Shown here piece after piece: positions 2,901 to 44,770 of a stretch of DNA of 60,787 nucleotides. The notes under the pieces were generated by a model. It searched no databases, was not told where the DNA came from, and saw nothing but the letters and a program-made list of their open reading frames with translations. Where the stretch lies: assembly GCF_040938485.1 (NCBI RefSeq), contig NW_027271795.1, forward strand, positions 1,674,001 through 1,734,787, written 5' to 3'. Position numbers and translations under genes: made by a program. Position 1 is the first letter of the stretch. Each line of letters begins with the position of its first letter. The DNA is from Diadema antillarum. Its lineage: Eukaryota.

Positions 2901-3229
2901 GGACGGAATCGTGAATAGAAGCCTTCTTTATTTCCGCTGTGTTGGTATTATTGATCGTTGGTGTCCTATTCGTTAATCACCGAAGGATGAAATTTGCGTA
3001 CATTTGAGAAGATTGACCACCGGGAAAGAAACCCAAATATATTATTCAAAGTAAACCGTGTCGTTGCAACTTTGCCTGTAATCATTGTTAGATTCGTCCG
3101 TGGGTCAGAGGATAATGGTGAAGACGTGTCAAAGAAATAAGACCCGAGACAGAGTATGTCAAATACAATCTCGTCCTGTGTTTGGAGTTGTCCCATTGCA
3201 TTCATGGGGGAAGGTAAATGCATGGGTAG

Positions 3230-3520
3230 TGTGATTTAGCCTGTTACGTAATGACAAACGACTTTCCTTTGTTGTAATGTCTGCGGGGAATAAGGATTCA
3301 CTCATGCCGTAAGTATTCTCTGGTCTCATTCCACGGGGTATTATACCAACCTGGCCAATGACAAAGACCCTCCGCACAACTGCGCATTTGTGCCCGTGTC
3401 GTTTATAGGGCGCTCTTGTCTTATTTTTAGCACGATCATGCGTAGTATTTCTTCTGGGTGTTCCTTCAAGAGTTAAAAAGCCCCATGATACGGACATTTT
3501 TCCTTTTCAAATTCTTTCTT
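3230..3520 (-). mobile_element. Possible decayed LINE ORF1 (RRM-type) fragment
   Basis: The minus strand reads KNLKRKNVRIMGL, resembling the RRNN[LV]RI.G motif of L1/CR1 ORF1. Frameshifts and stops follow. Confidence 0.25.
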
Positions 3521-4034
3521 GTTTCCTTCAAGACTTTGCACAGGTGAACGCTGATATGTAAGGACATAATACCGGCATTTTTCGTGACAAATTTTTAGTG
3601 CTAGTCGGAGCGGACGGAGGTACGAAGAGAGGAGCGTTATCCAGGGCATTCTTTTATAAGTCGTCCCTTTCTAGGAGCAAGGTTACAAGACTGCCACACA
3701 GACAACTATGCTCTGCTCTTAGAGCCGCAGCGACTGCAGCTCTGCAAGAAGTCCACATTTCATGTTATCGGCGTGATCTATCTGGTAAGTGACTGAAAAG
3801 ATTCAACATGATCCACATGAATGTATCCCGCGTCTTCATCTTCATGTTTAAGTGGCGATGATAAAAGTGGCTTCTTATACCATGTGGGAATGTGCACTGG
3901 GAAGACGTGTTACGGCGAGTAGGCGAGTGAGGAGAACGAGCATACGCTTCGAAGATGATGATATATGATATATTTAGAGAGAGAAAAAGAGACTGTCAAA
4001 TAATGATATCGACCACCACCAGAGAAATCATGTT

Positions 4035-4036
<2 letters not shown>

Positions 4037-4069
<33 letters not shown>
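4037..4069. repeat. (TA)n microsatellite
   Basis: Direct reading of the sequence. Confidence 0.95.
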
Positions 4070-4072
<3 letters not shown>

Positions 4073-4499
4073 CATGCATATATGGATATATATGGATATA
4101 AACACGCTAATACAATGTATACATGTATATATGTGTATGTAGGTGTGTGTAGGTGTGTGTTACACACATTGATCTTTTCTGTGGTACATGTATTTCTATT
4201 ACATATATACAAGTGTATTATGATTGAACTACAAAGCGTAGGTATAGTTGCTGAATAGATTGTTTTACGAGAATCTTGAATCTTGAAGATAATAATCCGA
4301 TAGCAGCTTGTCCATGAAGCCAAACTGGGATGGGTGTGAGCCAGTATAGGTGACAGTGTTAGAAGTATAGAGTATAGGCCACAGTGAAAAAGTTGTATGT
4401 ATACATTTAAAAAAAATGAATGCGCAAGCAAAATCCACTTCTGGGTTTAGAGCAGCCTGGGGCACACAAGAGGGTGCATCCCTTGATGACAGGAAGGGT

Positions 4500-4790
4500 G
4501 GCCTCCTGGAAAGCAGCAACTGATGATGGTGCTGTGACTGCAAAGAGAGGTACATTAGTAGGGGTTCCAGGTCCTGATTGTGCGGGGGTAGAAAGAATAG
4601 TAATTTCTTAGCGTCAATGGGTGCGGCAGGAAATTCGTACTTTAGTAGGTGATCGTCTCTGCTGAAATATTTAACTGGAGTTATATACACTGGAAGTGGG
4701 ATATTGACGTGATGGTGGTGAATCTTGAAGAACATGGTGCATCGTGCTAGAAGTCTGCGAGTGTGTAAAGTGTAAAGAAAAACTTCATGT
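4500..4790 (-). mobile_element. 3' end fragment of a CR1-superfamily LINE
   Basis: RCTMFFKIHHHHVNIPLP...SRDDHLLKY, then after a frameshift YPRTIRTWNPL (4561-4590). This matches the typical RT C-terminal FFPRTIRDWNxLP motif. Confidence 0.75.
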
Positions 4791-6520
4791 CACGAGATTT
4801 TAGCGGGGTACATATGGAACTCTTGCCTATCACAGCATTCGTTCCGATATCATAATCATTCATACCGGTGAAATAAAGTCTCACATTTTGCAAACACCCA
4901 TGGGTTTATGTATAGTGTATCTATATACAATGCACTGTATATATTTACGTATAATATATACACATACTACATTGTATATATCTACGTATACATGCGTATA
5001 TATAATTGTATATACATACACTCAGCAAAGAAAAAAAAGAGAAAGTGAACACTTTTTAACTCTCATATTTCGCATAGAGTCTTTGGCTAGAAATTAAAGT
5101 ATAACAAATACCATTCTAAAGGTAATTCAATTGACTATCAGCCTGGTGGGTCAATAAAAAGGGAAACTTTACACATTGGTAAACACATTCGTTTTTCTCT
5201 TCCGAGGCACAAAGGACAAGATTGCAATAACGAACAAGTTGACATTCATGAGTAAGTGCTCTACAACATATGAATGAGAACAAAAGACAAATTTAGCACT
5301 ATAAGAAATACTTATTATTTTGAAAATAAACCTGTGATCTCTATACATAACGTTTTTGTAGACATGATGATAACGAAAGACTAACAAAAATGGAGTAAAA
5401 TCATTAATCTTCTGTCAAATCCCAATTCAAATGGCATTAGAGAGGAAGTGATACTTACAAAAATGTTAGAAATTTGACATTTTATTACATGTATGTAATA
5501 GGAACTATAAAAAAATATTTGGCTCTTGATTATTGTCTCATGAATTCCTAAATTTGTGAATTAAAAGAATGAGATAATGAATTTTTTCATATCAATCACC
5601 TTTGTGGCCAAACTCCCTACAATTTTGTATATCCTTTGAAGTTGATGTTGACAGAAAGTTCTTATGCCCCCTCTGGTTTCCCACTTTGGTCTTCTAGTTT
5701 TAGTTTGAGGCTATGAAAAGGTACAAGAGAACAAAAACATATTTTTGCTATTTCATTCATGTCTCTCATTGTTTTAAATTGGTCTTTTGTCATTGTTTCT
5801 TGAAGGACATTTGTACATGAATAACAACATGTCAATATTTGCAACTTTCGCTTTTTACTTTGGAGGACAAAAATGAATGTGCTCAATCATGCATACCTTT
5901 CCCCTTTGTATTGACCTCTGGGCTGATTTACAGTGTAGGTAATAAAGTAGCTTTAAAAGATATATACATGTAATATATTGATTTTTATCAAAATCTTCTA
6001 CAGTGTATGAAAAATATTAACTGCAAGAAGTGGTAACCTTTTTTTTTTTTTTTGCCGAGTGTATAATTGTACATGTAGTTGTGTAAACACGAAACATGAT
6101 CATTAAGTTGTATTTGATGGAAATTGAATGTCCGAAATTAATAAGTAATGCTTCCCCCTCAACTCCTTCAATTTATTTTCTCAAATCCACTTATGATTTA
6201 CAGATTAAAGGTTGTCAAGTGTGTTTGCTGTGTCGTCACAATCATGACTGTTTATTCTATCTTTAAAAATAATGCCAAGTTAAATCCACAGTGCCTTGAC
6301 AGGAGATGAAAACGCGATGGATTTTTGGCGAAATAATGATTAATGAGGAAAGTAGCGTGATATTCGAAATACATTATTTCAGCTAGGAAAAGCTTTAACT
6401 TATTCATGCGGTTGCAGTAGAATTTCCAATACAATTTCTGAGAAGAAAACAAATGAAACAGACGCATCAAAGCTTACAACTTGTATGCCAACTTCTCTTT
6501 ATTTTTCAGGTCCTTGCAAG

Positions 6521-7996
6521 ATGTCGATGATAGCTCGATCCAATCTCGTGCGCATATCATGGCTCTTCCTTCTCGTACCCCTTGCCATCTATGGGCTACT
6601 CTACCTCCACTGCAGTTCGAACGCCGAATACTCCCGCGAGCTCCATCGACGTCGACTCGTCCTTTGGAGTATAACCAATCGCGAGTTGTCGGCCAATAAG
6701 ACGATACGGACGTTTGCCCGGCTCGGGCTCCTGCCCGACAGCGCTGTCGTGGGCAGACTCAACGACACCTTGATGTTGCTGATGGACGCGGACAACGATA
6801 TCGTGAACGTTCCCATCAGCACAATGGCCAGCGGTCTGGATGATAGGGCTTTGATAAACCTTTCGCGTGGAAATGATAACCATGAGGCGACGAACCTCCG
6901 TGAAATGGGAAAAGGACGTTTGAGGGAAGATAATGTGCCCGAGACAAAGATGGAGAATGAAATCATTAAAAAGATCAAGTCTGATGATGGCGACCTGATG
7001 AACGATGATGACGAGGAAAGCGAGGCAGAGGATGACGAGGCTGTCCAGAAGGAAAACGAGAATGCGGCAAACCAGCGAGCAGTTCCGGAAATTAAAGTGA
7101 AACGGTACGTCGACGAGCGCGTCGACGAACACAACTACCGTTATGTTCATCTACCTAAGCATCGCTGCACTCTGTCCACTGGGAAAGTCAAGCCCGTCTT
7201 CGTCATATTCATGGTGGTCACCGCGCCAGGGAATTTCAAGCGTCGGTTGGTGGTTCGTGAAACCTACGGCAATGAAAAGGAATGGCCCGCCATCAAACGC
7301 GGTTCGTTCACCTCGGTCTTCCTGCTCGGAACTCCGAAAAACGCTACTCTCCAAAAGCTGATCGACGAAGAGGCCGCAAAATATGGAGACATTGTGCAGG
7401 AGGACTTCGTCGACAGCTACGCGAATCTGACTCTGAAGACGGTGATGGGGTTGAAATGGATGACGCTTCATTGTCGACACGCCAGTTTCATGATGAAGAT
7501 CGACGACGACTCAATGCTGAATCAGGGTCGGTTCCTCTGGATCTTTAAGAACTCCACCATTTCCAACTGGACGGCTGCAGAGGCCCTGATAGGAGCAAAG
7601 GTCTTCCGAAATACTTCCAGCAAGTATTACATATCTGAAGAATACTACCCATCTCCTACTTATCCGCCTTACCTCAACGGGCCTGGCTACATCATGTCAA
7701 CGGATCTGGGAGCAGCGGCTTACAAGGCGGCCCTCACCACACCCCTGTTTCCCTGGGAGGACGTCTTTCTCGGCACCTGTCTCAAGAAGCTCAATGTAGA
7801 TCCCGTCGTTCACAGACATTTCCTCTGGATATCGGACGAAACCCTACTGTCCATCAAAAGCGAAAAGTCTCTAGTAAGAAGACTGCGGGCCTATGTGGTC
7901 GTATCAAATCTCTATCCGGAATATATGCGAATAATGTGGACTACCTGTAAAATCAAGATATACGAGCATAGATCGCGCATTCCGCGACATCATTAA
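6521..7996 (+). CDS. Beta-1,3-galactosyltransferase-like (GT31) type II membrane protein, paralog 1, 491 aa, single coding exon
   Basis: N-terminal TM (ISWLFLLVPLAIYGLLYL) and GT31 motifs RRLVVRETYG, YGDIVQEDFVDSYANLTLKT, KIDDD, YPPYLNGPGY and EDVFLG. Splice acceptor tttttcag at 6502-6509 lies 11 nt before the ATG at 6521. Confidence 0.93.
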   Translation: MSMIARSNLVRISWLFLLVPLAIYGLLYLHCSSNAEYSRELHRRRLVLWSITNRELSANKTIRTFARLGLLPDSAVVGRLNDTLMLLMDADNDIVNVPISTMASGLDDRALINLSRGNDNHEATNLREMGKGRLREDNVPETKMENEIIKKIKSDDGDLMNDDDEESEAEDDEAVQKENENAANQRAVPEIKVKRYVDERVDEHNYRYVHLPKHRCTLSTGKVKPVFVIFMVVTAPGNFKRRLVVRETYGNEKEWPAIKRGSFTSVFLLGTPKNATLQKLIDEEAAKYGDIVQEDFVDSYANLTLKTVMGLKWMTLHCRHASFMMKIDDDSMLNQGRFLWIFKNSTISNWTAAEALIGAKVFRNTSSKYYISEEYYPSPTYPPYLNGPGYIMSTDLGAAAYKAALTTPLFPWEDVFLGTCLKKLNVDPVVHRHFLWISDETLLSIKSEKSLVRRLRAYVVVSNLYPEYMRIMWTTCKIKIYEHRSRIPRHH

Positions 7997-12782: not shown

Positions 12783-15762
12783 AGTAGGAGACCTTTCCAT
12801 ATTTTCAATAGATCAGTTTACAAACGGAGTCGAATTTCTCGGACACCTTTCAAACAAATGAGTTTCTTTGAGAAGGATTTCCAGTGTGTTGCGCGACAGA
12901 GCAATAGTCGATTAATGCAAATTGGATTCCCGTGTAACTTATTTTGATATTTTACATCATCGTGTACGCATAGGGCCTATGTTTCAGATATGACAAAAGG
13001 CGTTCTTTCAATGTAGAAAGTTTGCCGAGACCTTGCCCGACATAGGAATGGCAAATGCATGCCTATTGCATTCCAAATATCAAGATGCAATTAGTATGTA
13101 CAGGTGGACCGGATATCTTGTTTCTTAGGTCCTATCAGGACAAAATAGTAACGAATTAGCCACGTTGGTAAAGTGCCCTATGAAAACGTTTTCAGCAGGA
13201 ACATTAGTTAGTTACAAAACTCTGCACCTAGCATGCTTAGTCCTCGTGATATCTGTGGAATATCTATATGAACTTGAATACATTTGTAAATTAACGAGTT
13301 CGATGAAAGAGATAGATATATGAGCGATAGGAATTAAGAACCGGTCAATCTAGGTCTACCTCAGAGCTCTACCAACGTACTTTTACACCCAAGTACCTGA
13401 GTGGTGACGTCACAAAGTAGCAAGTTCAGCAAACTCGAGGTGAGGGTACGGTCACACATCAGTTCCTTTTTTGACCTCACGTATCGTTTGAGTCAGATTG
13501 TATTGATTAAATCCTATCGATCACCTCCTCCCTCGCATTGTACTTTATTAAAGCCCTCAAAAAATGTACCCAATGTTTCTTAAAATACCGATGGAATTTA
13601 AGGGAGAGAGGTCCCAGAACGGTCAAGCGGATACTTTCTTTCATTTTGAAGTCAGATGCATTACTCTCGAATAGTTGCGTTGATAAAAAATGTCTGTTGC
13701 TCTGAAAGACGAAAGGAGTCGACTGATGAACTTGGTTACCTGAATGTTAAAGTGGTTGTTCCCGCGAAGGACAATACATTCTTATACCTTCCTGCGACAC
13801 CCTGCAAAGCCGTTGTCCACATAATCGATTTAAAGGATGCGAAAGAGCGAAAATAACAACGACTCACAGGTGGTGGAACAATGGCCGGGTGAACATAACA
13901 CATCTACGGGAGGGATTTTTTTTCGGCAGTTGTATTGTTTGGAAGAGAGTAAGTGCTGAAGAAATTCTTTTGGTGGAAACTCATTCATAATCAACTGTAC
14001 GCAGCTCTTTGCACAAGTAAACAACTCTCAAACGATGGCTCGTGGTCTGAATGTGCGTTCACCCTACTAGAGCTGACCAAACTTGATCTACGGAATCACG
14101 AACCACTGACTTGATATGACCATGGCGACGAATAGGTGTAAATTGTCATGAGGGTGAATGAATGAACGAAGAGCTCACGGAGGAGGCAGTCGTGTGCATC
14201 GGCGACTTCATAGACATCGATGAATGCAGACCGTCACGTGAGTTATGAGAGTCGCTGTTATAATACTATGCCGTGTCACTTGGCTACATCCAGACTGACC
14301 CGTTGCTGTAATGTTGAAACAGTCCGGGGGCGACGACACTAAATATTGCTTGATGTACTGCGTCCCAGTATTCCCTCCGGTTATTGGCTATATTTTTTTA
14401 TGTTTTTCATTTTCCTTGTTGATATCAAATTTCGTGTCCTCATGACATTACAGTGGAAGGTAGATCAATTGATTTACGCCCACAACTCATAAATGCATTT
14501 GATATTTGCGCATTGCTACTATTATTCCTATCCAAGACAATTTGATAAAAACGTGAACGTACAGTGCAGGCTTTCACTGATTGTGTTACGAATGTACATT
14601 ATACAGGCATATTATGTATGTATAGAAGAGTAATCTGCTATTTGTGAATCTGTCTCGTTTGGGAACTTGCAGTGGGAAAATCACCAGAATTGCCAAAATT
14701 GTAGAATAACTGCATCTTTGGAGTTAAAAAAGATGTGCATTGTACAAACATTGTTGTGTTCCTCTAGGCAAGTCCAAATAAAGCAACAGAAACGATATAA
14801 TATAGCCTGCACTGTTTATTGGTTGAAGAAACGGGGTTGCAAACAATGACGCATTATTGATTACAGACATTGGCCCCAAGGCTTATACTTCTACAGAAAA
14901 TAGACATTAGGCAGTAAGTGTGGGTTGGAGGTGCAGGGGTGCTTAGAATTATGGTTGTGGATAACGGTTAACCGCATAAGCGACCCCGACACGTTCGTGT
15001 AACTGGTTACAGCGTCCCGGGGGCGTTAGGTTGTGGATAGCATTGGATGAAGACATGGGCTTGGGTCAACGTGAATAGGTGTATCACACGTATATACCTA
15101 TGAAACTCTTTTCAAGGCCATAGATGGATTTCTTAAATATTCAGCCATGATATGGACCATTGTTTCCCTCCATATCAATCAGGGGTTTGCGTATGATACA
15201 CTGTAACATAGTCTAATCGAATACATGTGGCCGGTTTTTGTTACCTATTAAAGATCTAGACGTAGGCCTACCTTTTGATCAAAGGTTGTTCTTGACAACC
15301 TGAAAGTTTGTCCGAGGCTTGTTCTGCTTCCTTGAGCACCCAATCATGCATTCTTATGTGAAGCTGCTTTATCACCACCCTTGTTCATTGTGATTTGTTA
15401 TGAATTTTGAAAACATTCATATTCCCTATCCCAATCACTTTAAATTCTGTAACTCTGTACCCAGTATAACTAATTTATAGATGTTCCCATGCAAAAATCT
15501 AAGAATTATCCGGAGCTTCCCTTTAAAACGTTCGCTGCAGCAGTGTCTAATTCAAAGTAAAAGTATGACTTTGAAATTATGAAATAAATGATAGTCGTTG
15601 CTCGTTATTTGTAATGGAATTTCTGTGAGAAATGAATGTGAATGTTAATTTAAAGTGTTATACTGCATCAAAGATTTATTTTAGCATTCGTTTAATCGAC
15701 ATGGAAATGAATGGCCCTTTGCTAATGTGGTTTGTTTGTTTGTTTGCTTGTTTTTTTTCAGC

Positions 15763-16935
15763 ATGAACGTACGAACCTTGCCAGCCCGCCTTGCCTGCTT
15801 GCTGTTATTCGGGCAGATCGCCTTCTACTGTTTCGTGCACCTGAGGAGTCGGTCGACCAGACGAAAATATCCAAAACATATTCAGTTTCCCGGGATGTTC
15901 CAAGCCGTATCCAATCACAGATTAATACAGGGTAGTAGACTACATCGTTCCGATGAAGATTCACTCCTTGTTCATCATTCAGTGCAACCCTCGACTCTAA
16001 ACAAAACTGCGCAAATCAAAGATGGCGGAACTATACAAGAAAAGCCAAAGAAATCTTATCTGGAAAGACATGCCGACGAGCACAACTACGCCTATCTGCA
16101 CAACCCGGCAAACATCTGCATGACAGCAGGCAACACCAAAGAAAAAGTATTCGTGATTTTCGTCGTAGTTACAGCGCCGAAAAATTCCTGGAGGCGCCGG
16201 GTGGTTCGCGAAACCTATGGTAGTCCAAGCGCGTGGCCCCTGCATGCTCGGGGCAGCTATAAACGGATCTTTCTGCTTGGCTCGACTAGCAACGCAACCA
16301 TACAACGATTCATCAACAAGGAGGCAGAAAAATATGGCGATATCGTGCAGGAGAGTTTCGTCGACGTCTACGAAAACCTAACGCTAAAGACCACCATGGC
16401 TCTGAAGTGGGTGACGAACTTCTGCCGCCATGCGCAGCTGATGATGAAAATCGACGACGACTCGATGATCAGCCAGACCCGTCTTTTGAGCATCCTCGAC
16501 AAATCGTCGCCGACCAACTGGACTGCCGGCAAGGTGATGGTGCAATCTCCAGTGTTTCGTAATCCAGATGCCAAGTTCTTCCTTTCCGAGGACTTTTACC
16601 CTCTTCCTACTTACCCTCCATACCTCAACGGACCTGGCTACATCCTCTCCACAGACTTGGTAGAAGCCAGCTACCAAACGGCTCTGACCACGCCCATTTT
16701 TCCGTGGGAAGATGTCTTTGTCGGCTTTTGCCTCGCGAAGCTCAACGTAAAAATGGATAACACCACGTATCATCGATTTCTCTGGATTCCTTCTTTCGAC
16801 AGCGTGGACGAGAGGCGGAAGTACCTCATGGTCGTGCGGAGGATGAGGTCATACGTGGTCGTGACGAACTTGGATTACAGATTCATGCGCATTATGTGGG
16901 CTGTCGGGAAGCTAAAGAGTCCTGGTACCAAATGA
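15763..16935 (+). CDS. Beta-1,3-galactosyltransferase-like (GT31) protein, paralog 2, 390 aa, single coding exon
   Basis: TM LACLLLFGQIAFYCFV and motifs RRRVVRETYG, YGDIVQESFVDVYENLTLKT, KIDDD, YPPYLNGPGY and EDVFVG. Acceptor ttttttttcag ends at 15761 and the ATG is at 15763. Confidence 0.93.
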   Translation: MNVRTLPARLACLLLFGQIAFYCFVHLRSRSTRRKYPKHIQFPGMFQAVSNHRLIQGSRLHRSDEDSLLVHHSVQPSTLNKTAQIKDGGTIQEKPKKSYLERHADEHNYAYLHNPANICMTAGNTKEKVFVIFVVVTAPKNSWRRRVVRETYGSPSAWPLHARGSYKRIFLLGSTSNATIQRFINKEAEKYGDIVQESFVDVYENLTLKTTMALKWVTNFCRHAQLMMKIDDDSMISQTRLLSILDKSSPTNWTAGKVMVQSPVFRNPDAKFFLSEDFYPLPTYPPYLNGPGYILSTDLVEASYQTALTTPIFPWEDVFVGFCLAKLNVKMDNTTYHRFLWIPSFDSVDERRKYLMVVRRMRSYVVVTNLDYRFMRIMWAVGKLKSPGTK

Positions 16936-22247: not shown

Positions 22248-23453
22248 TCACCGTCCAGCTTGACTGTCAGTCTGTGATTTATGTATGTTTTCTCGGTGAT
22301 GTACCCGCTTGCAGCCACCCTCGTCACAATGGTAAGTACTGAGGTGTATAGTGGGCACTGCCTCGCCACAGCGGGAAGGAGGCCTCTTCGGGCGAATGGG
22401 ACGTATGACAGATATCCGGCCTTGTGCTTGGGGAGTAAGGTTTTCGTTCCGCGCCGGAGTGCACGGAGGTCGACAAAGTGGCGGTGACATGACCTTCCCC
22501 AACACCTTGCCAAGGAGGCGTCCACAGCTTTTCCGAAACTGTGACTTCGTGAACCAATACAGGGCGGGGTTGATGGCACTGTTGAGATATATTAAGGCAG
22601 TAAAACAGAGGCGGACTATGGGCTTCAACCTGAAACTTGGGTTGTACGTTTCTATGAGAATGCCGATCATTATTGGTAACGTACAGACCATAAACACAGC
22701 TTGAATACTCACAAGCTTTATCACAACTCTTAGCTCGTGAGATGACCGTGCTGTGGCGAGTGCGAAGCCCGGCCTGCCAGGTCCGTCTGCCTGGACGTCA
22801 ACTCTCCGAATGCGTCTCATAAGGATGTAAATCACTCGTGCGTAGAACAATATAGTAAAAAATAATGGTACGCACTCGTGCACGTACAGTACCAAGTTTA
22901 TGTATAATTTGTCGAAAAGTGCTGTAAAATCCATACATGATCGACCGTCTCCGTATCGAAACGTTGACCGGTACGATGTCACAATCATAGGTACGATAGC
23001 GGTGATCGTGGCGCATATCCAGATGGATACGATTAAAACGCGTGCATAGAACTCAGTGATGCGCCATCTTAATCTACCAGCGATGTGGAGGTAGCGATCC
23101 AGCGCCACCCCGACTAGGCTCCAGATACTGGCGACACACTGTCCTATCAGGATGCAATAGACCAGCAGACAGGACCAGTAAGGTGGAGACGAGTGGCTGA
23201 TGACGATGCCGAGGATCATAGAGAGCCCGAGCAGGAAATCGGCCACGGCGAGGCTGATCAGGAAGGCAGTCGTGACGCTACGCAGCCTGTGGGATCCGCA
23301 CACCGTCGCAAGTACAAGACCATTGGCAACGATGGTCCACGTGCACACAAGGACCTGCAGGATCAAGCTCACTATGAAAGATCTCGGATTACCATCGCTT
23401 CCATGCCTCACTCCTGCTGTGTCGTTCTCAAGTTCACTAACCAATGGATCCAT
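22248..23453 (-). CDS. Rhodopsin-family (class A) orphan GPCR, 401 aa, intronless CDS
   Basis: Seven hydrophobic segments with motifs IVANGLV (TM1 N), LAVAD (TM2), DRY (TM3), IW (TM4), CTLP (TM6), NSAINPALY (TM7) and helix 8 FRKS. N-glycan sequon NDT near the N-terminus. First in-frame ATG at 23453 (the ORF-track start is TTG). Confidence 0.93.
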   Translation of the reverse strand: MDPLVSELENDTAGVRHGSDGNPRSFIVSLILQVLVCTWTIVANGLVLATVCGSHRLRSVTTAFLISLAVADFLLGLSMILGIVISHSSPPYWSCLLVYCILIGQCVASIWSLVGVALDRYLHIAGRLRWRITEFYARVLIVSIWICATITAIVPMIVTSYRSTFRYGDGRSCMDFTALFDKLYINLVLYVHECVPLFFTILFYARVIYILMRRIRRVDVQADGPGRPGFALATARSSHELRVVIKLVSIQAVFMVCTLPIMIGILIETYNPSFRLKPIVRLCFTALIYLNSAINPALYWFTKSQFRKSCGRLLGKVLGKVMSPPLCRPPCTPARNENLTPQAQGRISVIRPIRPKRPPSRCGEAVPTIHLSTYHCDEGGCKRVHHRENIHKSQTDSQAGR

Positions 23454-24800
23454 TTTGTCTGTCCTGTCACTTCCAACTTTCCCCACACTTATACACGATG
23501 ACTCACAGATTTCTATGGCGTGATAGTTGTTAGCACACCACAAGGAGAATCAAACTCACATGCATCCTCTGAGCCGCTCGAATGGAAGGAATGCTTTAGA
23601 ATGTTGTGAACCTCGCAGCATTATTATTGTCTTTAAACTTCGTCGAGACAATGATTTTGATGTTTCCGATCTTGAAAAATGTAGCCGTTGACGCTACACA
23701 ATGTTTCTGCTTGAGATGCTTCGAGATAATTGTGTTAGGTGCACGCGATACGTCTTCACGCCAGCCAATTCGCCACACCAACTGTTTCATGAAACTATGG
23801 GTTCTTTTATGGTTGCTAAAGGTAACTGACTCAAGAGATGCCCATGCGAAGTGTTCTAGATATACACTGGTTCCTTGTTCTACTTTGCGACGAGAGAAAA
23901 ATCACGCATGCGCGCGCAGGTACTCCGCTCACGCAGGCAAAAAACAACAAAAGTTTCTCTCTGCTTTCCTGGAAATCTGCGTTGACCAGTCTAATTTTGT
24001 GTTGCCAGTACTCATATAAATCAAGTTGTGACCAAGCGCTGTCATGTATGACTCCAAAATCCACACTCCACACTTCTCTTGAGCAACACAGTAATCTACC
24101 GTTACATTATCATAATATTATTTTGTGTCGTCTGCGCATTTTTCTTTTCACTAATAGGGCACACGTGCGATTAATGCACCTGGATGTATCTAGTGCTTGT
24201 GAGTTCATCGTCACGGGGCATCGTCTATTTTCGTCACGGGTATAGACAGTGCAAGAGACGATATTCGGCTTGTTCAAAATGATCTAACATCTCGGGAGGA
24301 TTGATGACGTCTTTAATGGAAGGATGAAGATGTTTCCAAAGACCACTGTGAGAAAGAGAGAAAGAGAAAGAGAGTGCAGTCATTATCAACCAAGATAATT
24401 GGAGGCTTTTCCCAGGGTAATTTGTATAATGACAGCGAAGGCGAAGTAATGATGCCGATTGGTCAAATTGTCGGTAGTATACCTGCGTAGTATTTCGGCA
24501 ACTACACCTAATGAGGGTGCTAAGATTACCTCAAAATCTGAATCCTGAAACAAAACTAGTTGTCATTAAGTAGTTAGATAAACTGAAAAGAATATCCTTG
24601 CTATCTATTACAAAAAGTGCGAGATACAGAAGCTTTTTACTTCAAGCCAAAAGACTCTTTACAAGATGATTATGATATACATTTATTATGGTGTACACAA
24701 CGCACAAGGGCGATGTGATTAAGATCTGTAGATAACTTTTACTGACGTTCAGCAATCAACGGATACTTTTACTAACTTTGTAACATTATCTTAAAATATT

Positions 24801-32200: not shown

Positions 32201-33218
32201 AATTATGGTGGACTCGATTACAAATCATGGTCTTTTCTCCATGGGCATGATAAAAAAAATCAATGCATTAAGAACAAAAAATAAAACAGAACAAAAGTGA
32301 ATCAAAGATGACAAGATAAGAATAGATTGTTAGCTAGAAGACTGAAGAAAGAGGACGGGGATAATAGGACAGTAAACGGACAAGGACACGGACAGGGAAG
32401 GAATAATATATTGATGATTACGGTATAAAGAAAATAATGACGAGGATGACGATTATAATGATGATGGTATAATAATTACTATCATCATTATTATCACTAT
32501 AACAATCACAGTTAGGAGAAGAGAAATGTTTTGAAGAAAGAATGGTGAACAATGCAACACACATTGATACGTTGGTGAGGAAAACAAAACGCAAAAAACA
32601 TTCCAAAGAAATCCTTATATAGGCAGCAAGCTTTTTACCTGAATTTATGTGTCGAATTTTGCATGATTTTTTTTTTTTTACGATTGAGAAATACAAAATT
32701 CATTAAAAACAAAAAACAAAAAGGCAGCGGGCAAACTCACTTTAATGCAATCTGCGTTTGTATTCTAATTTGTCAATTTCATGATGTTTACATTTTTTAC
32801 CAATGACAAATCAGCGGGACAAAAGTCAGCTTGAAGAAGACAAAAAAAAAAAAAAAGGAATACGCATGGGTCTGAACTAAATTAGGAGTCAGTGAGGTGA
32901 CGACTGGCCCCTACAGACCTCATTATTCATATTCTTTTCTTTGAAGCGAAGATGTTATTAAGCCGTCAGTGCATAATTATGGTCACACTGTTCCCGTGTT
33001 ACCACACGTGCCTTCCGTGAAACTTATTATCTTCAGGACACATCGGATATTCACTATTGTCATTGGTCTATACATTTCATTTGGATTCGAGATTTAACTT
33101 TTTAATGATTACTTATCTGTTTCTTCTTTTTTTTTGTCTTTTCAAGATAGTCTTCCTTTTTTTCTGATCAATCCGAGAAAAATTTGGCGTCCGTGAGGAT
33201 ACACACAAACACACACAC

Positions 33219-33254
<36 letters not shown>

Positions 33255-33339
33255 GCTCCACGTATTGGCAGTACTAGAAATAGCAATAATAGTGTCACAA
33301 CAGTGGAATGCATTAAATGCCAATCTTGATTTTGATGGA

Positions 33340-33381
33340 TAATCCGAATTTTCGAGGATCCTTCCTCTTCATCAGGGATGA
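33340..33381 (-). ncRNA. Mirror-image identical hammerhead ribozyme motif on the minus strand
   Basis: Exact reverse complement of 33440-33481. Confidence 0.65.
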
Positions 33382-33439
33382 CAGTGCGAATTTTCACAGT
33401 GATATCACTGTGAAAATATCACTGTGAAAATTCGCACTG

Positions 33440-33481
33440 TCATCCCTGATGAAGAGGAAGGATCCTCGAAAATTCGGATTA
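33440..33481 (+). ncRNA. Candidate minimal type I hammerhead ribozyme (Penelope-type)
   Basis: tcatcc-CTGATGA-a-gagga-agga-tcctc-GAAA-at-TC-ggatta. This gives the catalytic core, a 5-bp helix II, a palindromic AATT helix III and helix I tcatcc/ggatta. Confidence 0.65.
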
Positions 33482-33537
33482 TTCATTAAATTCAAGATTG
33501 GCATTTAATGCATTCCACTGTTGTGACATTATTATTG

Positions 33538-33593
<56 letters not shown>

Positions 33594-33910
33594 CATACAT
33601 ATATCTCAGAAAAAACAAAAACAGTCATTATTACAGGTTGAGATATGCCACAAGCAGGCAACCATTTCCGATATATGAGATATAGCCTTGTTCATGTATC
33701 TCCGTTTCCTTCCAGACTGTTATTGAAATATATTATTCACGATTTATGTAAGCTGGCAAGGACAATACTTTGGAAAGACTTCTTCTCTTCCGCCTCACCC
33801 CTCCTCCTTTTTCTTGTTCTAGTCATTGTCATTAATATCACTAGTATGATTATCATCGTCATCATCATTCTTATCGTCATTACTTGTATGTTTTTATTAC
33901 TTTCTATTGA

Positions 33911-39403: not shown

Positions 39404-39976
<573 letters not shown>

Positions 39977-43052: not shown

Positions 43053-43694
43053 TCAGCAAATCAACACACGATACTGTGCTATCTCGAATACTGTATGAGG
43101 CAAGAAGTTTGTGGATGTTTTGCAATTAATAAATCGTCGCTGGGGTGATAAGACCTTGTATCTGCAATTCTGGTGAAAATGAGTTTTTTGGATTAATGGT
43201 CAAATAATGGGTTAAGTGATGTCCTGTCCAAATCCCAACTGTCTTACTCCAAAAATGAAGCCACCACGGCATGTCGAAGGAAAGGCTATCCCATTCGCCA
43301 CAGTGCTTTGGCCGCCATGTTTTTTGGCTCTCCTGAACATTTGACATTTTGTAGATACGAGGTCTTATCGCCCCAGCGACGAAATAGATGATTGAGTTCA
43401 GCACCAATACAATTCACTTCTGCAGGGCTTGTTTTCTTCTTTTTTTTACTTTAAAGTTTCAGGCATGGAAGTGAAAGAATTCAAAATTTTCAGCATCTGA
43501 TAATCTAAACATGATGCAAATTCATTGGCCATTCACTACTTTAAACATTCTTGAATAAATTCTTAAATCCATTTACATTCTTTGGTAATTCAAATATGTC
43601 TTATGTATATCTCTCTATCAGTTAATATTCTTCAATTACAGATCACCTCAATGCATGTCTATTCAAAATAGCATTAATATGAATAATAGTTCAC

Positions 43695-44383
43695 CCTCTA
43701 TGGTGCATATCCTCTTGTATCCTGCATCTGCCATCGTTGTCTTGGCTCCGCATGTTGGGCAGAACTTGTAACGGTCGTGCCAGGCCAGCATGGACCTCCC
43801 CTGAGCGATGATACCAGCATCTTCCTCTCTTAACGTCATGAGCGCCAATCTGTTCCTCCTAGATAAGGCCTCAGCCTCTGGCTTCACTTCCTGCATCTTC
43901 TCATCCGGTATACTCGTCACATCCAGGGCAAACCACGCTCCTTCCTGAAGGCGCTCTCCTCCATTTTGCTCCTGCTTTGGAGAGGCCTTCAGACTCTGGT
44001 GCACTGGTCCCACACCTAAAAAGACAGTGGAAGATTCCGCCTCATTCAAAGCGAAGGAGATCTCCCCATATGTGTATGCAGCAAGGGCATACTGGAACGA
44101 TCCATCACTGCTCTCTGAAGGGGTGACGTAAGGGTTCAGGTCTCGGTAGAGCACATAGGTGGTGGTGGGATCTCTCATGGCGTCGTCCAGCCACTGTCGG
44201 TCAGTACGTCGGTGGCTCTGCCGATCCAGAGGATTGACACCAAAGAAGTTGACCACATCCTTCTCAGCAGCCTTCTTGGCCTGTGGATCACTCCGCAAGA
44301 GACTGACCACTGAAGAGTGGTCCCAGAACTCAGCAATGTCCAGAGAGTTTTGCCCTGATTTGTTGCGGAGAAGTGGATCGCAC
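43695..44383 (-). CDS. NUDT12: NUDT12 coding exon 2 (end of ankyrin region, NudC-like domain, zinc ribbon)
   Basis: CDPLLRNKSGQNSLDIAEFW, FFGVNPLDRQSHRRTD, GRSMLAWHDRYKFCPTCG...KRICTIEG. Acceptor tgcag, donor gtgaac. Confidence 0.95.
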
Positions 44384-44770
44384 CTGCATACATTAAGAAA
44401 TTCATGCACACAAATGATGCAAACACATCAAAATGGAGCAACATAATACTTGGCTGGAGAGATTACAGCATATGATCATTTGAGATCAGGGATGTGATGT
44501 CAAAAGGGCAGATGCTAAAACCATTTCCTATACCAAAAATAATTTCAATCTTATGAGTGTATATAAAATTTACACAGTAGTCAAATTCTCATTTGCATTG
44601 ATTCCATTTGCTCTCCAAAAGTCCTTTGGCTGTACCGGTATGTCCTTTATAGTATGAAAAAACTTCACTGTGGTCAGTGCGCAGCAAGATAAATGAACAA
44701 AACAAACAAACAAACAAAAATAGAAAAAGATACCACCTTTCCCGTTTGCACCACCTGACCATTCACTCAC

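What the first reader, a model, noticed from the sequence alone, without database searches (positions are those of the whole stretch)
33340..33481. Back-to-back pair of minimal hammerhead ribozyme motifs, one on each strand
Seen: 33440-33481 reads tcatcc CTGATGA a gagga agga tcctc GAAA at TC ggatta, and 33340-33381 is its exact reverse complement. As RNA this gives the CUGANGA/GAAA/UH core, a 5-bp helix II with a tetraloop, and helix I of 4 contiguous pairs plus one. Helix III is reduced to the palindrome AAUU, and cleavage is predicted after UUC (33475/33476). Established: Penelope-like retroelements carry minimal type I hammerheads with short palindromic helix III, proposed to cleave as dimers, and often insert as inverted repeats. 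An extra nucleotide after A9 is known in a natural viroid hammerhead (CChMVd). Inference: this is a Penelope terminal relic, so a transcript crossing it in either direction would carry a candidate self-cleavage site. It lies in the intergenic region between the 3' end of NUDT12 and the 5' region of the GPCR. A read-through transcript could instead fold into a 125-bp dsRNA hairpin that sequesters both motifs.
Basis: partly seen in the sequence, partly recalled or inferred. Interest (0 to 1): 0.78.

Follow-up and report, generated by a model that had tools for sequence, protein, structure and literature searches.

The report
Penelope retrotransposon stubs with hammerhead motifs
The two mirror-image "self-cutting RNA" motifs are real. 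They sit in a dead, head-to-head pair of truncated tail ends of a Penelope-like jumping gene inserted in a TA repeat, an arrangement already described for these elements, so the find is genuine but ordinary.

Summary
Window 33440-33481 (+) and its exact reverse complement 33340-33381 (-) carry a complete minimal hammerhead: the CUGAUGA, GAAA and UC core, one unpaired A after A9, a 5-bp helix II, a 4-bp helix I and AAUU in place of helix III.

The motifs lie in a palindrome with 131-nt arms, flanked by (TA)n.

I found parent-type elements whose 3' end is 85-87% identical to the arm. They encode a reverse transcriptase with a C-terminal GIY-YIG-like endonuclease. They also show a 30-nt tail at only one end, an adjacent inverted 5'-truncated copy and a (TA)n target. 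All of these are published Penelope-like element (PLE) traits.

Across three subfamilies the catalytic core varies only at N7, the position allowed to vary. Helix II has two compensatory pairs.

Every feature that Cervera & de la Peña (2014) list for PLE minimal hammerheads is met. Rfam's canonical hammerhead models do not hit.

At this locus the motif is probably inert. A transcript holds one sense copy plus its antisense and folds into a hairpin of -224 kcal/mol. Published single minimal hammerheads did not cleave in vitro.

This scan has already reported the same kind of structure elsewhere in this genome.

The parts
33199..33251 (.). Left flank: (CA)n/(TA)n microsatellite, the insertion target
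   Evidence: Other copies of the family are also flanked by (TA)n.
33252..33281 (-). 30-nt terminal 'tail' of the element, present only at the left end of the insertion
   Evidence: It aligns with the 3' terminal tail of the RT-encoding copies L064 and L065 and of L017 and L003. The right arm lacks it and runs straight into (TA)n. Craig et al. 2021 describe a 30-40-bp tail that is often present at only one end.
33282..33405 (-). Left arm: a 5'-truncated 3'-terminal fragment of a Penelope-like element, sense on the minus strand
   Evidence: It is 85-87% identical to the 3' ends of the RT-encoding elements.
33340..33381 (-). Minimal type I hammerhead motif on the minus strand
   Evidence: It is the exact reverse complement of 33440-33481 and a descriptor hit.
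33406..33539 (+). Right arm: a second 5'-truncated 3'-terminal fragment, sense on the plus strand. It reaches about 10 nt further upstream than the left arm and has no tail.
33440..33481 (+). Minimal type I hammerhead motif: helix I 33440-33445 with 33476-33481; core CUGAUGA 33446-33452; unpaired A 33453; helix II 33454-33458 with 33463-33467; GAA 33468-33470; AAUU 33471-33474; C17 at 33475; predicted cleavage between 33475 and 33476
33540..33600 (.). Right flank: (TA)n microsatellite

Best explanation
Window 33252-33539 is one old insertion of a Penelope-like retroelement (PLE) into a (TA)n microsatellite. It consists of two severely 5'-truncated copies of the element's 3' end (about 125-135 nt each), joined head to head, so both outer ends are element 3' termini. 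Each stub carries the family's minimal type I hammerhead, which is why the motif appears once on each strand. In full elements the motif is conserved. Published work proposes that it helps process tandem PLE transcripts by acting as a dimer. At this locus it is a passenger: no coding capacity remains, only one sense motif can occur per transcript, and any read-through RNA should fold into a hairpin of about 130 bp that hides both motifs. Shown here: the motif, the palindrome, the repeat family, the parent-type elements and the helix II covariation. Inferred: the integration mechanism and the lack of activity at this locus.
For: 1. The arm is a dispersed repeat: 1,178 first-look candidates, 66 matches among the 40 candidates scored, at 84-100% identity.
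2. The outer ends are fixed next to (TA)n, but the inner ends differ between loci (solo arms in L004, L012 and L022; different centres in L003, L017 and L022). This is the pattern expected of 5' truncation.
3. In L063, L064 and L065 the arm homologue (85-87% identity) is the last ~130 nt of an element with an ORF of 559-754 aa. The ORF matches RVT_1 at E 1e-15 to 1e-14.
4. The ORF's C-terminus reads as a GIY-YIG motif with a CX5CxxC linker and gives a weak Pfam GIY-YIG hit (E 0.012).
5. The nearest Atlas clusters carry HTH_animal, DUF8422, GIY-YIG and RVT_1 (score 0.98).
6. These loci also hold an inverted 5'-truncated copy next to the longer one.
7. The 30-nt tail is present at only one end.
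8. Between the three subfamily majority sequences the core differs only at N7 (U, A or C), and helix II changes GAGGA/UCCUC to GGGGG/CCCCC. That gives two pairs with both sides changed, in 13 cells against 3.2 in shuffles, and 92.8% of cells paired against at most 56% when the partner is slid.
9. All four non-descriptor features listed for PLE minimal hammerheads are met, and pairs on opposite strands 100-700 bp apart are described in the same paper (PMC4209133).
10. The published PLE structural traits all match (PMC8557442).
11. The whole insertion folds at -224.1 kcal/mol (z = -30), with helix II probability 0 in that context.
Against: - No Rfam hammerhead model matches. This is expected for a motif without a helix III stem-loop, but it means no independent curated model endorses the motif.
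- The covariation amounts to two pairs in one subfamily, so it may be a single evolutionary event. Helix I shows none.
- The isolated 63-mer does not prefer the hammerhead fold. Helix I pairing probability is about 0.04, and the 50-mer's z-score is 0.33.
- The RT-encoding copies I found belong to a sister subfamily (N7 = A). The exact master of the window's subfamily (N7 = U) was not found.
- GIY-YIG scores below Pfam's cutoff.
- No cleavage or expression data exist.
Confidence: 0.9

Rival explanations
1. The motifs are working ribozymes at this locus. They cleave read-through transcripts from the NUDT12-like gene or upstream transcripts of the GPCR, so they have been co-opted for RNA processing.
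For: All catalytic-core positions are intact in both arms. The insertion is also present in a second copy of the locus, about 95% identical over 1.4 kb, on contig C921 (L002/L011).
Against: - Individual copies of the family decay freely in the core. Examples are G5 to C in L012, GACA in L003 and GAUA in L040. The C921 copy has a helix II mismatch in one arm.
- The two arms of the window copy have themselves drifted by about 4-5%.
- A single S. mansoni minimal hammerhead had no detectable cleavage in vitro.
- The hairpin fold dominates.
- Nothing marks this copy out from more than 1,000 others.
Confidence: 0.04
2. It is a MITE or foldback DNA transposon with terminal inverted repeats and a TA target-site duplication, and the hammerhead-like string is incidental.
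For: It is a near-perfect palindrome flanked by TA, is high in copy number and has no ORF.
Against: - The arms are homologous to the 3' untranslated end of RT-encoding elements.
- The inner ends vary between copies, and solo arms exist.
- A one-sided 30-nt tail is present.
- The flanks are long (TA)n tracts, not a 2-bp duplication.
- The core varies between subfamilies only at the permitted N7 position, and helix II shows compensatory changes.
Confidence: 0.03
3. The palindrome acts as a hairpin-RNA gene, a source of endo-siRNA or miRNA-like small RNAs. This would be a by-product compatible with the main explanation.
For: The hairpin is very stable (-224 kcal/mol). The central part gives Rfam hits to mir-35, bantam and mir-36 with E 2e-7 to 3e-6.
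Against: All those hits are below the families' gathering scores (46.7 against 70.2, 42.8 against 61, 39.1 against 48). Any perfect hairpin would be expected to produce them. There is no evidence of transcription, and the centre differs between copies.
Confidence: 0.1
4. The core strings came together by chance, and there is no hammerhead.
For: CUGANGA and GAAA are short. Rfam models are silent.
Against: The descriptor gave 0 hits in 300 simulated windows. The motif sits at a conserved position in a PLE 3' end. The core is invariant between subfamilies apart from N7, with a compensated helix II. All the extra published features are met.
Confidence: 0.01

Closest known systems
Minimal hammerhead ribozymes (min-HHR) of metazoan Penelope-like elements (Cervera & de la Peña 2014, PMC4209133)
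   Same: Type I topology. CUGANGA/GAAA/UH core. One unpaired nucleotide between A9 and G10.1. A G10.1-C11.1 pair. No helix III stem-loop, only a palindromic 15.2-16.2 (AAUU). A short 4-5-bp helix I. Location in the terminal repeat region of a PLE. Most copies dispersed on truncated elements. Pairs on opposite strands 100-700 bp apart.
   Different: Helix II is 5 bp here, against 7-8 bp in the S. mansoni families. Here the two motifs are only 58 nt apart. The paper does not mention sea urchins or echinoderms. Activity is untested.
EN+ Penelope-like elements with a Zn-finger-like linker between RT and endonuclease (Neptune/Nematis type; Craig et al. 2021, PMC8557442)
   Same: RT followed by a C-terminal GIY-YIG-like domain. 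A CX5CxxC linker. Heavy 5' truncation. An adjacent inverted 5'-truncated copy. A 30-40-bp tail at one end. A (TA)n insertion bias. A hammerhead near the 3' end.
   Different: I did not place the protein in a phylogeny, so the clade assignment rests on the linker motif alone. A classical direct pseudo-LTR was not demonstrated. The 3' UTR of the copies seen carries two 226-bp internal tandem repeats.
Canonical type I hammerheads (Rfam hammerhead families; satellite and retrozyme hammerheads of newts, schistosomes, etc.)
   Same: The same catalytic core and order of helices. Both are proposed to act as dimers because helix III is short.
   Different: There is no helix III stem-loop and no loop-loop tertiary contacts. 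No Rfam hit at E<=10. The motifs are not in tandem arrays.
CChMVd (+) hammerhead with an extra A after A9 (De la Peña & Flores 2001, cited in PMC4209133)
   Same: An additional unpaired nucleotide between A9 and G10.1.
   Different: It is a viroid type III ribozyme with full helices. It is only an analogy for one position.

Membership tests
PLE minimal hammerhead (min-HHR) | Catalytic core C3-U4-G5-A6-N7-G8-A9, G12-A13-A14, A15.1-U16.1, H17 | tested here: met
   Read directly at 33446-33475. Between subfamily majority sequences the core varies only at N7.
PLE minimal hammerhead (min-HHR) | [quoted passage not shown] | tested here: met
   The A at 33453 is kept in all three subfamily majority sequences and in 28 of 29 aligned copies; L008 has G. 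The feature is listed in PMC4209133.
PLE minimal hammerhead (min-HHR) | G10.1-C11.1 closing pair of helix II | tested here: met
   G-C in 26 of 29 copies.
PLE minimal hammerhead (min-HHR) | Palindromic 15.2-16.2 and no helix III loop, which allows a dimeric helix III | tested here: met
   AAUU at 33471-33474. Both pairs are A-U in 28 of 29 copies.
PLE minimal hammerhead (min-HHR) | Families with covariation or compensatory changes in the helices | tested here: met
   Two helix II pairs switch from A-U to G-C on both sides (13 cells; 0 of 500 shuffles reach this). Helix I shows none. All the changes are in one subfamily, so the number of events is small.
PLE minimal hammerhead (min-HHR) | Resides in the terminal region of an element encoding RT and GIY-YIG | tested here: met
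   L064: ORF 3095-5359, arm homologue 6070-6201. The same layout is seen in L063 and L065.
PLE minimal hammerhead (min-HHR) | Self-cleavage (weak, as a dimer) | not testable with these tools
   This needs in vitro transcription. Published min-HHRs were inactive as monomers.
Canonical hammerhead, type I (Rfam models) | Match to the curated covariance model | tested here: not met
   No hammerhead family is listed at E<=10 in 3 kb or in a 71-nt slice.
Penelope-like element (EN+) | Reverse transcriptase domain | tested here: met
   RVT_1 at E 1.2e-15 to 1.1e-14, above the cutoff, in three loci.
Penelope-like element (EN+) | C-terminal GIY-YIG endonuclease | tested here: inconclusive
   Pfam GIY-YIG gives E 0.012 and 16.4 bits, against a cutoff of 22.6. 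The motif is visible in the translation. The nearest Atlas clusters carry GIY-YIG. There is no PDB relative.
Penelope-like element (EN+) | 5' truncation, adjacent inverted copy, one-sided 30-40-bp tail, microsatellite target | tested here: met
   The criteria come from PMC8557442.
Penelope-like element (EN+) | Direct pseudo-LTR formed by a partial tandem copy | tested here: inconclusive
   Only 226-bp internal tandem repeats were seen upstream of the arm. No upstream direct copy of the arm was seen in L063-L065.
MITE / foldback DNA transposon | Fixed terminal inverted repeats with a defined target-site duplication and a uniform internal structure | tested here: not met
   Variable inner ends, solo arms and homology to a retroelement 3' end.
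miRNA precursor (mir-35 / bantam / mir-36) | Score at or above the Rfam gathering threshold | tested here: not met
   46.7 against 70.2, 42.8 against 61 and 39.1 against 48.

The most novel reading that the evidence does not exclude
The short palindromes may record a single integration event in which the PLE reverse transcriptase, after stalling, turns back and copies its own cDNA (snap-back). The alternative is two independent priming events. In 11 distinct short palindromes from 10 independent loci the truncation point varies (17-38 nt upstream of the motif). The two arms nevertheless differ by only 1-12 nt in 8 of them, which come from 7 independent loci. If that is right, these stubs are a natural read-out of the still unknown PLE integration mechanism. 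When transcribed, they would also make long dsRNA aimed at the family's own 3' end.
Probability: 0.25. Interest if true: 0.4.

Novelty: new member of a known kind. Interest (0 to 1): 0.15.

Why it matters
It matters little beyond annotation. It also shows that palindromes with a 'ribozyme on each strand' in this genome are the expected footprint of head-to-head truncated PLE insertions in (TA)n. Other such hits from this genome can therefore be triaged quickly. The family offers clean material for two open questions. The material is three subfamilies with a compensated helix II, and RT-encoding copies 97-100% identical at protein level, some with uninterrupted frames. The questions are whether minimal hammerheads cleave in vivo, and how PLEs generate inverted structures.

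Tried and rejected
- Rfam scans with permissive thresholds, on 3 kb and on 71 nt, gave no hammerhead hit. They gave only sub-threshold miRNA-like hits caused by the hairpin.
- A PDB sequence search with the ORF found nothing.
- Walking upstream from the solo arm L012 found only a few longer copies of the C-type subfamily. Walking from L040 found nothing further. Walking from L038 led to the RT-encoding copies.
- The exact master of the window's own subfamily (N7 = U) was not found.
- I wanted the 3' ends of the more distant PLE lineages of this genome (58% and 45% protein identity), to test helix I and II covariation across families. I did not try to obtain them another way.
- A gapless symmetry measure failed on the long (about 1.4 kb) inverted pairs because of indels, so it does not support any claim about long copies.
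- A literature search for sea-urchin PLE hammerheads found nothing specific.
- Nothing in the window looked human, and no runs of N were touched.

Full report
**What is there.**
Window 33440-33481 reads, in order:
- helix I 5' strand UCAUCC
- CUGAUGA
- an unpaired A
- GAGGA, AGGA, UCCUC (helix II with a tetraloop)
- GAAA, AU, UC
- GGAUUA (helix I 3' strand)

Window 33340-33381 is its exact reverse complement. The two motifs lie inside a larger inverted repeat. Its arms are 33275-33405 and 33416-33546, 131 nt each and 95% complementary, with 10 nt between them and (TA)n on both sides.

I wrote a descriptor from the published minimal-hammerhead features. It finds only these two sites in the window and none in 300 Markov simulations. 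I defined it after seeing the motif. No Rfam hammerhead model matches at E<=10, either in 3 kb or on a 71-nt slice. The only Rfam hits are sub-threshold miRNA-precursor matches driven by the perfect hairpin.

**It is a repeat, and the repeat is a retroelement tail.**
The 131-nt arm has 1,178 first-look candidates there. The 40 candidates scored gave 66 matches, 84-100% identical.

One locus, C921 (L002/L011), is a second copy of the whole window region: 94.8% identical over 1.46 kb, palindrome included. It is an alternative haplotype or a duplication. The other loci share only the element and its (TA)n flanks.

The outer ends are constant, but the inner ends are not. L004, L012 and L022 are solo arms or arms cut at other points. 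L003, L017 and L022 have different centres. That is the pattern of 5' truncation, not of a fixed foldback transposon.

**The parent-type element.**
Walking upstream from longer copies led to loci where the arm is the last ~130 nt of a coding element. In L064 the layout is:
- an ORF at 3095-5359, matching RVT_1 at E 8.9e-15
- a C-terminus that reads as a GIY-YIG motif with embedded cysteines, preceded by a CX5CxxC linker, with Pfam GIY-YIG at E 0.012, below the cutoff
- a 3' untranslated region with two 226-bp tandem repeats
- the arm homologue at 6070-6201 (86% identical to the window arm), with the hammerhead
- a 30-nt tail, then (TA)n

The nearest ESM Atlas clusters (score 0.98) carry HTH_animal, DUF8422, GIY-YIG and RVT_1. 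An inverted, 5'-truncated copy abuts the element on its 5' side. L063 and L065 repeat this layout.

A genome search with the C-terminal 286 aa gave 1,021 candidates. Among the 136 scored there are lineages at 97-100%, about 58% and about 45% identity. Many lie in minus/plus pairs a few kb apart, that is, head to head.

**The window copy re-read.**
- The insertion unit is 33252-33539.
- The left arm (sense on the minus strand) ends in the 30-nt tail at 33252-33281.
- The right arm lacks the tail and joins (TA)n directly after ...TTGCT.
- The right arm reaches about 10 nt further upstream than the left, which accounts for the 10-nt 'spacer'.
- The arms differ at about 4-5% of positions, similar to the divergence from the C921 copy. 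The insertion is therefore not recent.

**Is the hammerhead a real family feature?**
Fifty-two distinct arms from the loci fall into three subfamilies:

| Subfamily | N7 | Helix II |
|---|---|---|
| A (the window) | U | GAGGA/UCCUC |
| B (the RT-encoding copies) | A | GAGGA/UCCUC |
| C | C | GGGGG/CCCCC |

- Between the majority sequences of the subfamilies, the only core position that differs is N7, the one position allowed to vary.
- Helix II differs at four positions, which form two fully compensated pairs.
- The AAUU, C17 and the unpaired A do not differ.
- Outside the motif, 15 of 80 aligned positions plus 12 indel columns differ.
- On 29 sequences the stated structure pairs in 92.8% of cells, against at most 56% when the partners are slid. 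Thirteen cells have changes on both sides, against 3.2 in shuffles (0 of 500 shuffles reach this).
- Caveats: both compensated pairs belong to one subfamily, helix I shows no covariation, and the 15 nt upstream of the motif are equally conserved.
- Individual dead copies carry core mutations, for example in L012, L003, L040 and L029. This is expected once a copy is no longer under selection.

**Comparison with what is known.**
Cervera & de la Peña (2014) defined minimal hammerheads in PLE terminal repeats. They list four features that were not imposed by their search:
1. consensus families with compensatory changes
3. a conserved G10.1-C11.1 pair
4. palindromic 15.2-16.2 positions

All four are met here. 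The same paper notes pairs of motifs 100-700 bp apart on opposite strands, and that most motifs sit on truncated PLEs. A single S. mansoni motif showed no detectable cleavage in vitro, and dimers and trimers cleaved weakly.

Craig et al. (2021) describe for PLEs heavy 5' truncation, an adjacent inverted truncated copy, a 30-40-bp tail often at only one end, and (TA)n as a preferred target. They note a Zn-finger-like linker between RT and EN in the Neptune and Nematis clades, and a CX2-5CxxC EN linker in Neptune. The locus matches on every point.

Sea urchins are not mentioned in the 2014 paper. This is therefore a new member of a known kind, not a new kind. Earlier notes of this scan report the same architecture at other places in this genome, and two follow-ups reached the same verdict.

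**How it most likely works here.**
In an active element the motif is presumably selected. The published proposal is that it processes multimeric PLE RNA as a dimer. That is inference.

At this locus nothing suggests function:
- No ORF remains.
- A transcript in either direction contains one sense motif and one antisense motif, so a cis dimer is impossible.
- The full insertion folds into one hairpin of -224.1 kcal/mol (z = -30), in which helix II has pairing probability 0.
- Even the isolated 63-mer prefers another fold. The hammerhead-compatible structure is -9.8 kcal/mol against an optimum of -12.4, and helix I probability is about 0.04.

The most a read-through transcript would yield is long dsRNA.

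**Context.**
Both neighbouring genes are on the minus strand. NUDT12-like exons lie at 43663-44409 and 39404-39928, and a single-exon rhodopsin-type GPCR ORF lies at 22248-23543. The insertion is about 6 kb downstream of the last NUDIX exon I detected and about 9.8 kb upstream of the GPCR start.

**Limits.**
- The master of subfamily A was not found.
- The clade assignment rests on a linker motif.
- GIY-YIG is below Pfam's cutoff.
I did not seek them another way.
I used only per-subfamily majority letters of the ~130-nt non-coding arm, inside a script, to count differences.

Noticed in passing
L064:5584-6041 (also L063 and L065, and many places): The 3' untranslated region of the RT-encoding element holds two tandem copies of a unit of about 226 bp, just upstream of the hammerhead-bearing terminal arm. 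The unit is itself a high-copy repeat (125 candidates).
   Followed up: partly
G000 places listed: At least three PLE protein lineages (97-100%, about 58% and about 45% identity to the query) are present, with more than 1,000 candidates. Many lie as minus/plus pairs 2-7 kb apart, so head-to-head insertion is the rule in this genome. Some 97-100% identical copies have uninterrupted frames.
   Followed up: partly
L049/L050, L058, L061/L062: Several loci hold inverted pairs of the B-type arm with the two hammerheads 1,340-1,417 nt apart. Such similar spacing suggests a recurrent truncation point near the ORF stop, or a propagating non-autonomous palindromic unit of about 1.7 kb.
   Followed up: no
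window 33378-33448, both strands: The centre of the palindrome gives sub-threshold Rfam matches to mir-35, bantam and mir-36 precursors (E 2e-7 to 3e-6, all below gathering scores). They are most likely an artefact of a perfect hairpin.
   Followed up: partly
L002/L011 (G000:C921:1016286-1019550): This is a second copy of the window's locus, on the opposite strand of another contig, 94.8% identical over 1.46 kb. Many other loci also come as identical twins on two contigs (L004/L005, L009/L010, L012/L013, L017/L018). The assembly seems to keep both haplotypes or large duplications.
   Followed up: no
window 6485-7996 (+) and 15727-16935 (+): Two long single-exon ORFs (503 and 402 aa) both match Pfam Galactosyl_T (E 3e-44 and 1e-45). 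They form a tandem pair of beta-1,3-galactosyltransferase-like genes upstream of the GPCR.
   Followed up: no
window 33199-33219: A short (CA)n-like tract precedes the left (TA)n. The (TA)n tracts on the two sides differ in length (about 32 and 50 nt).
   Followed up: no
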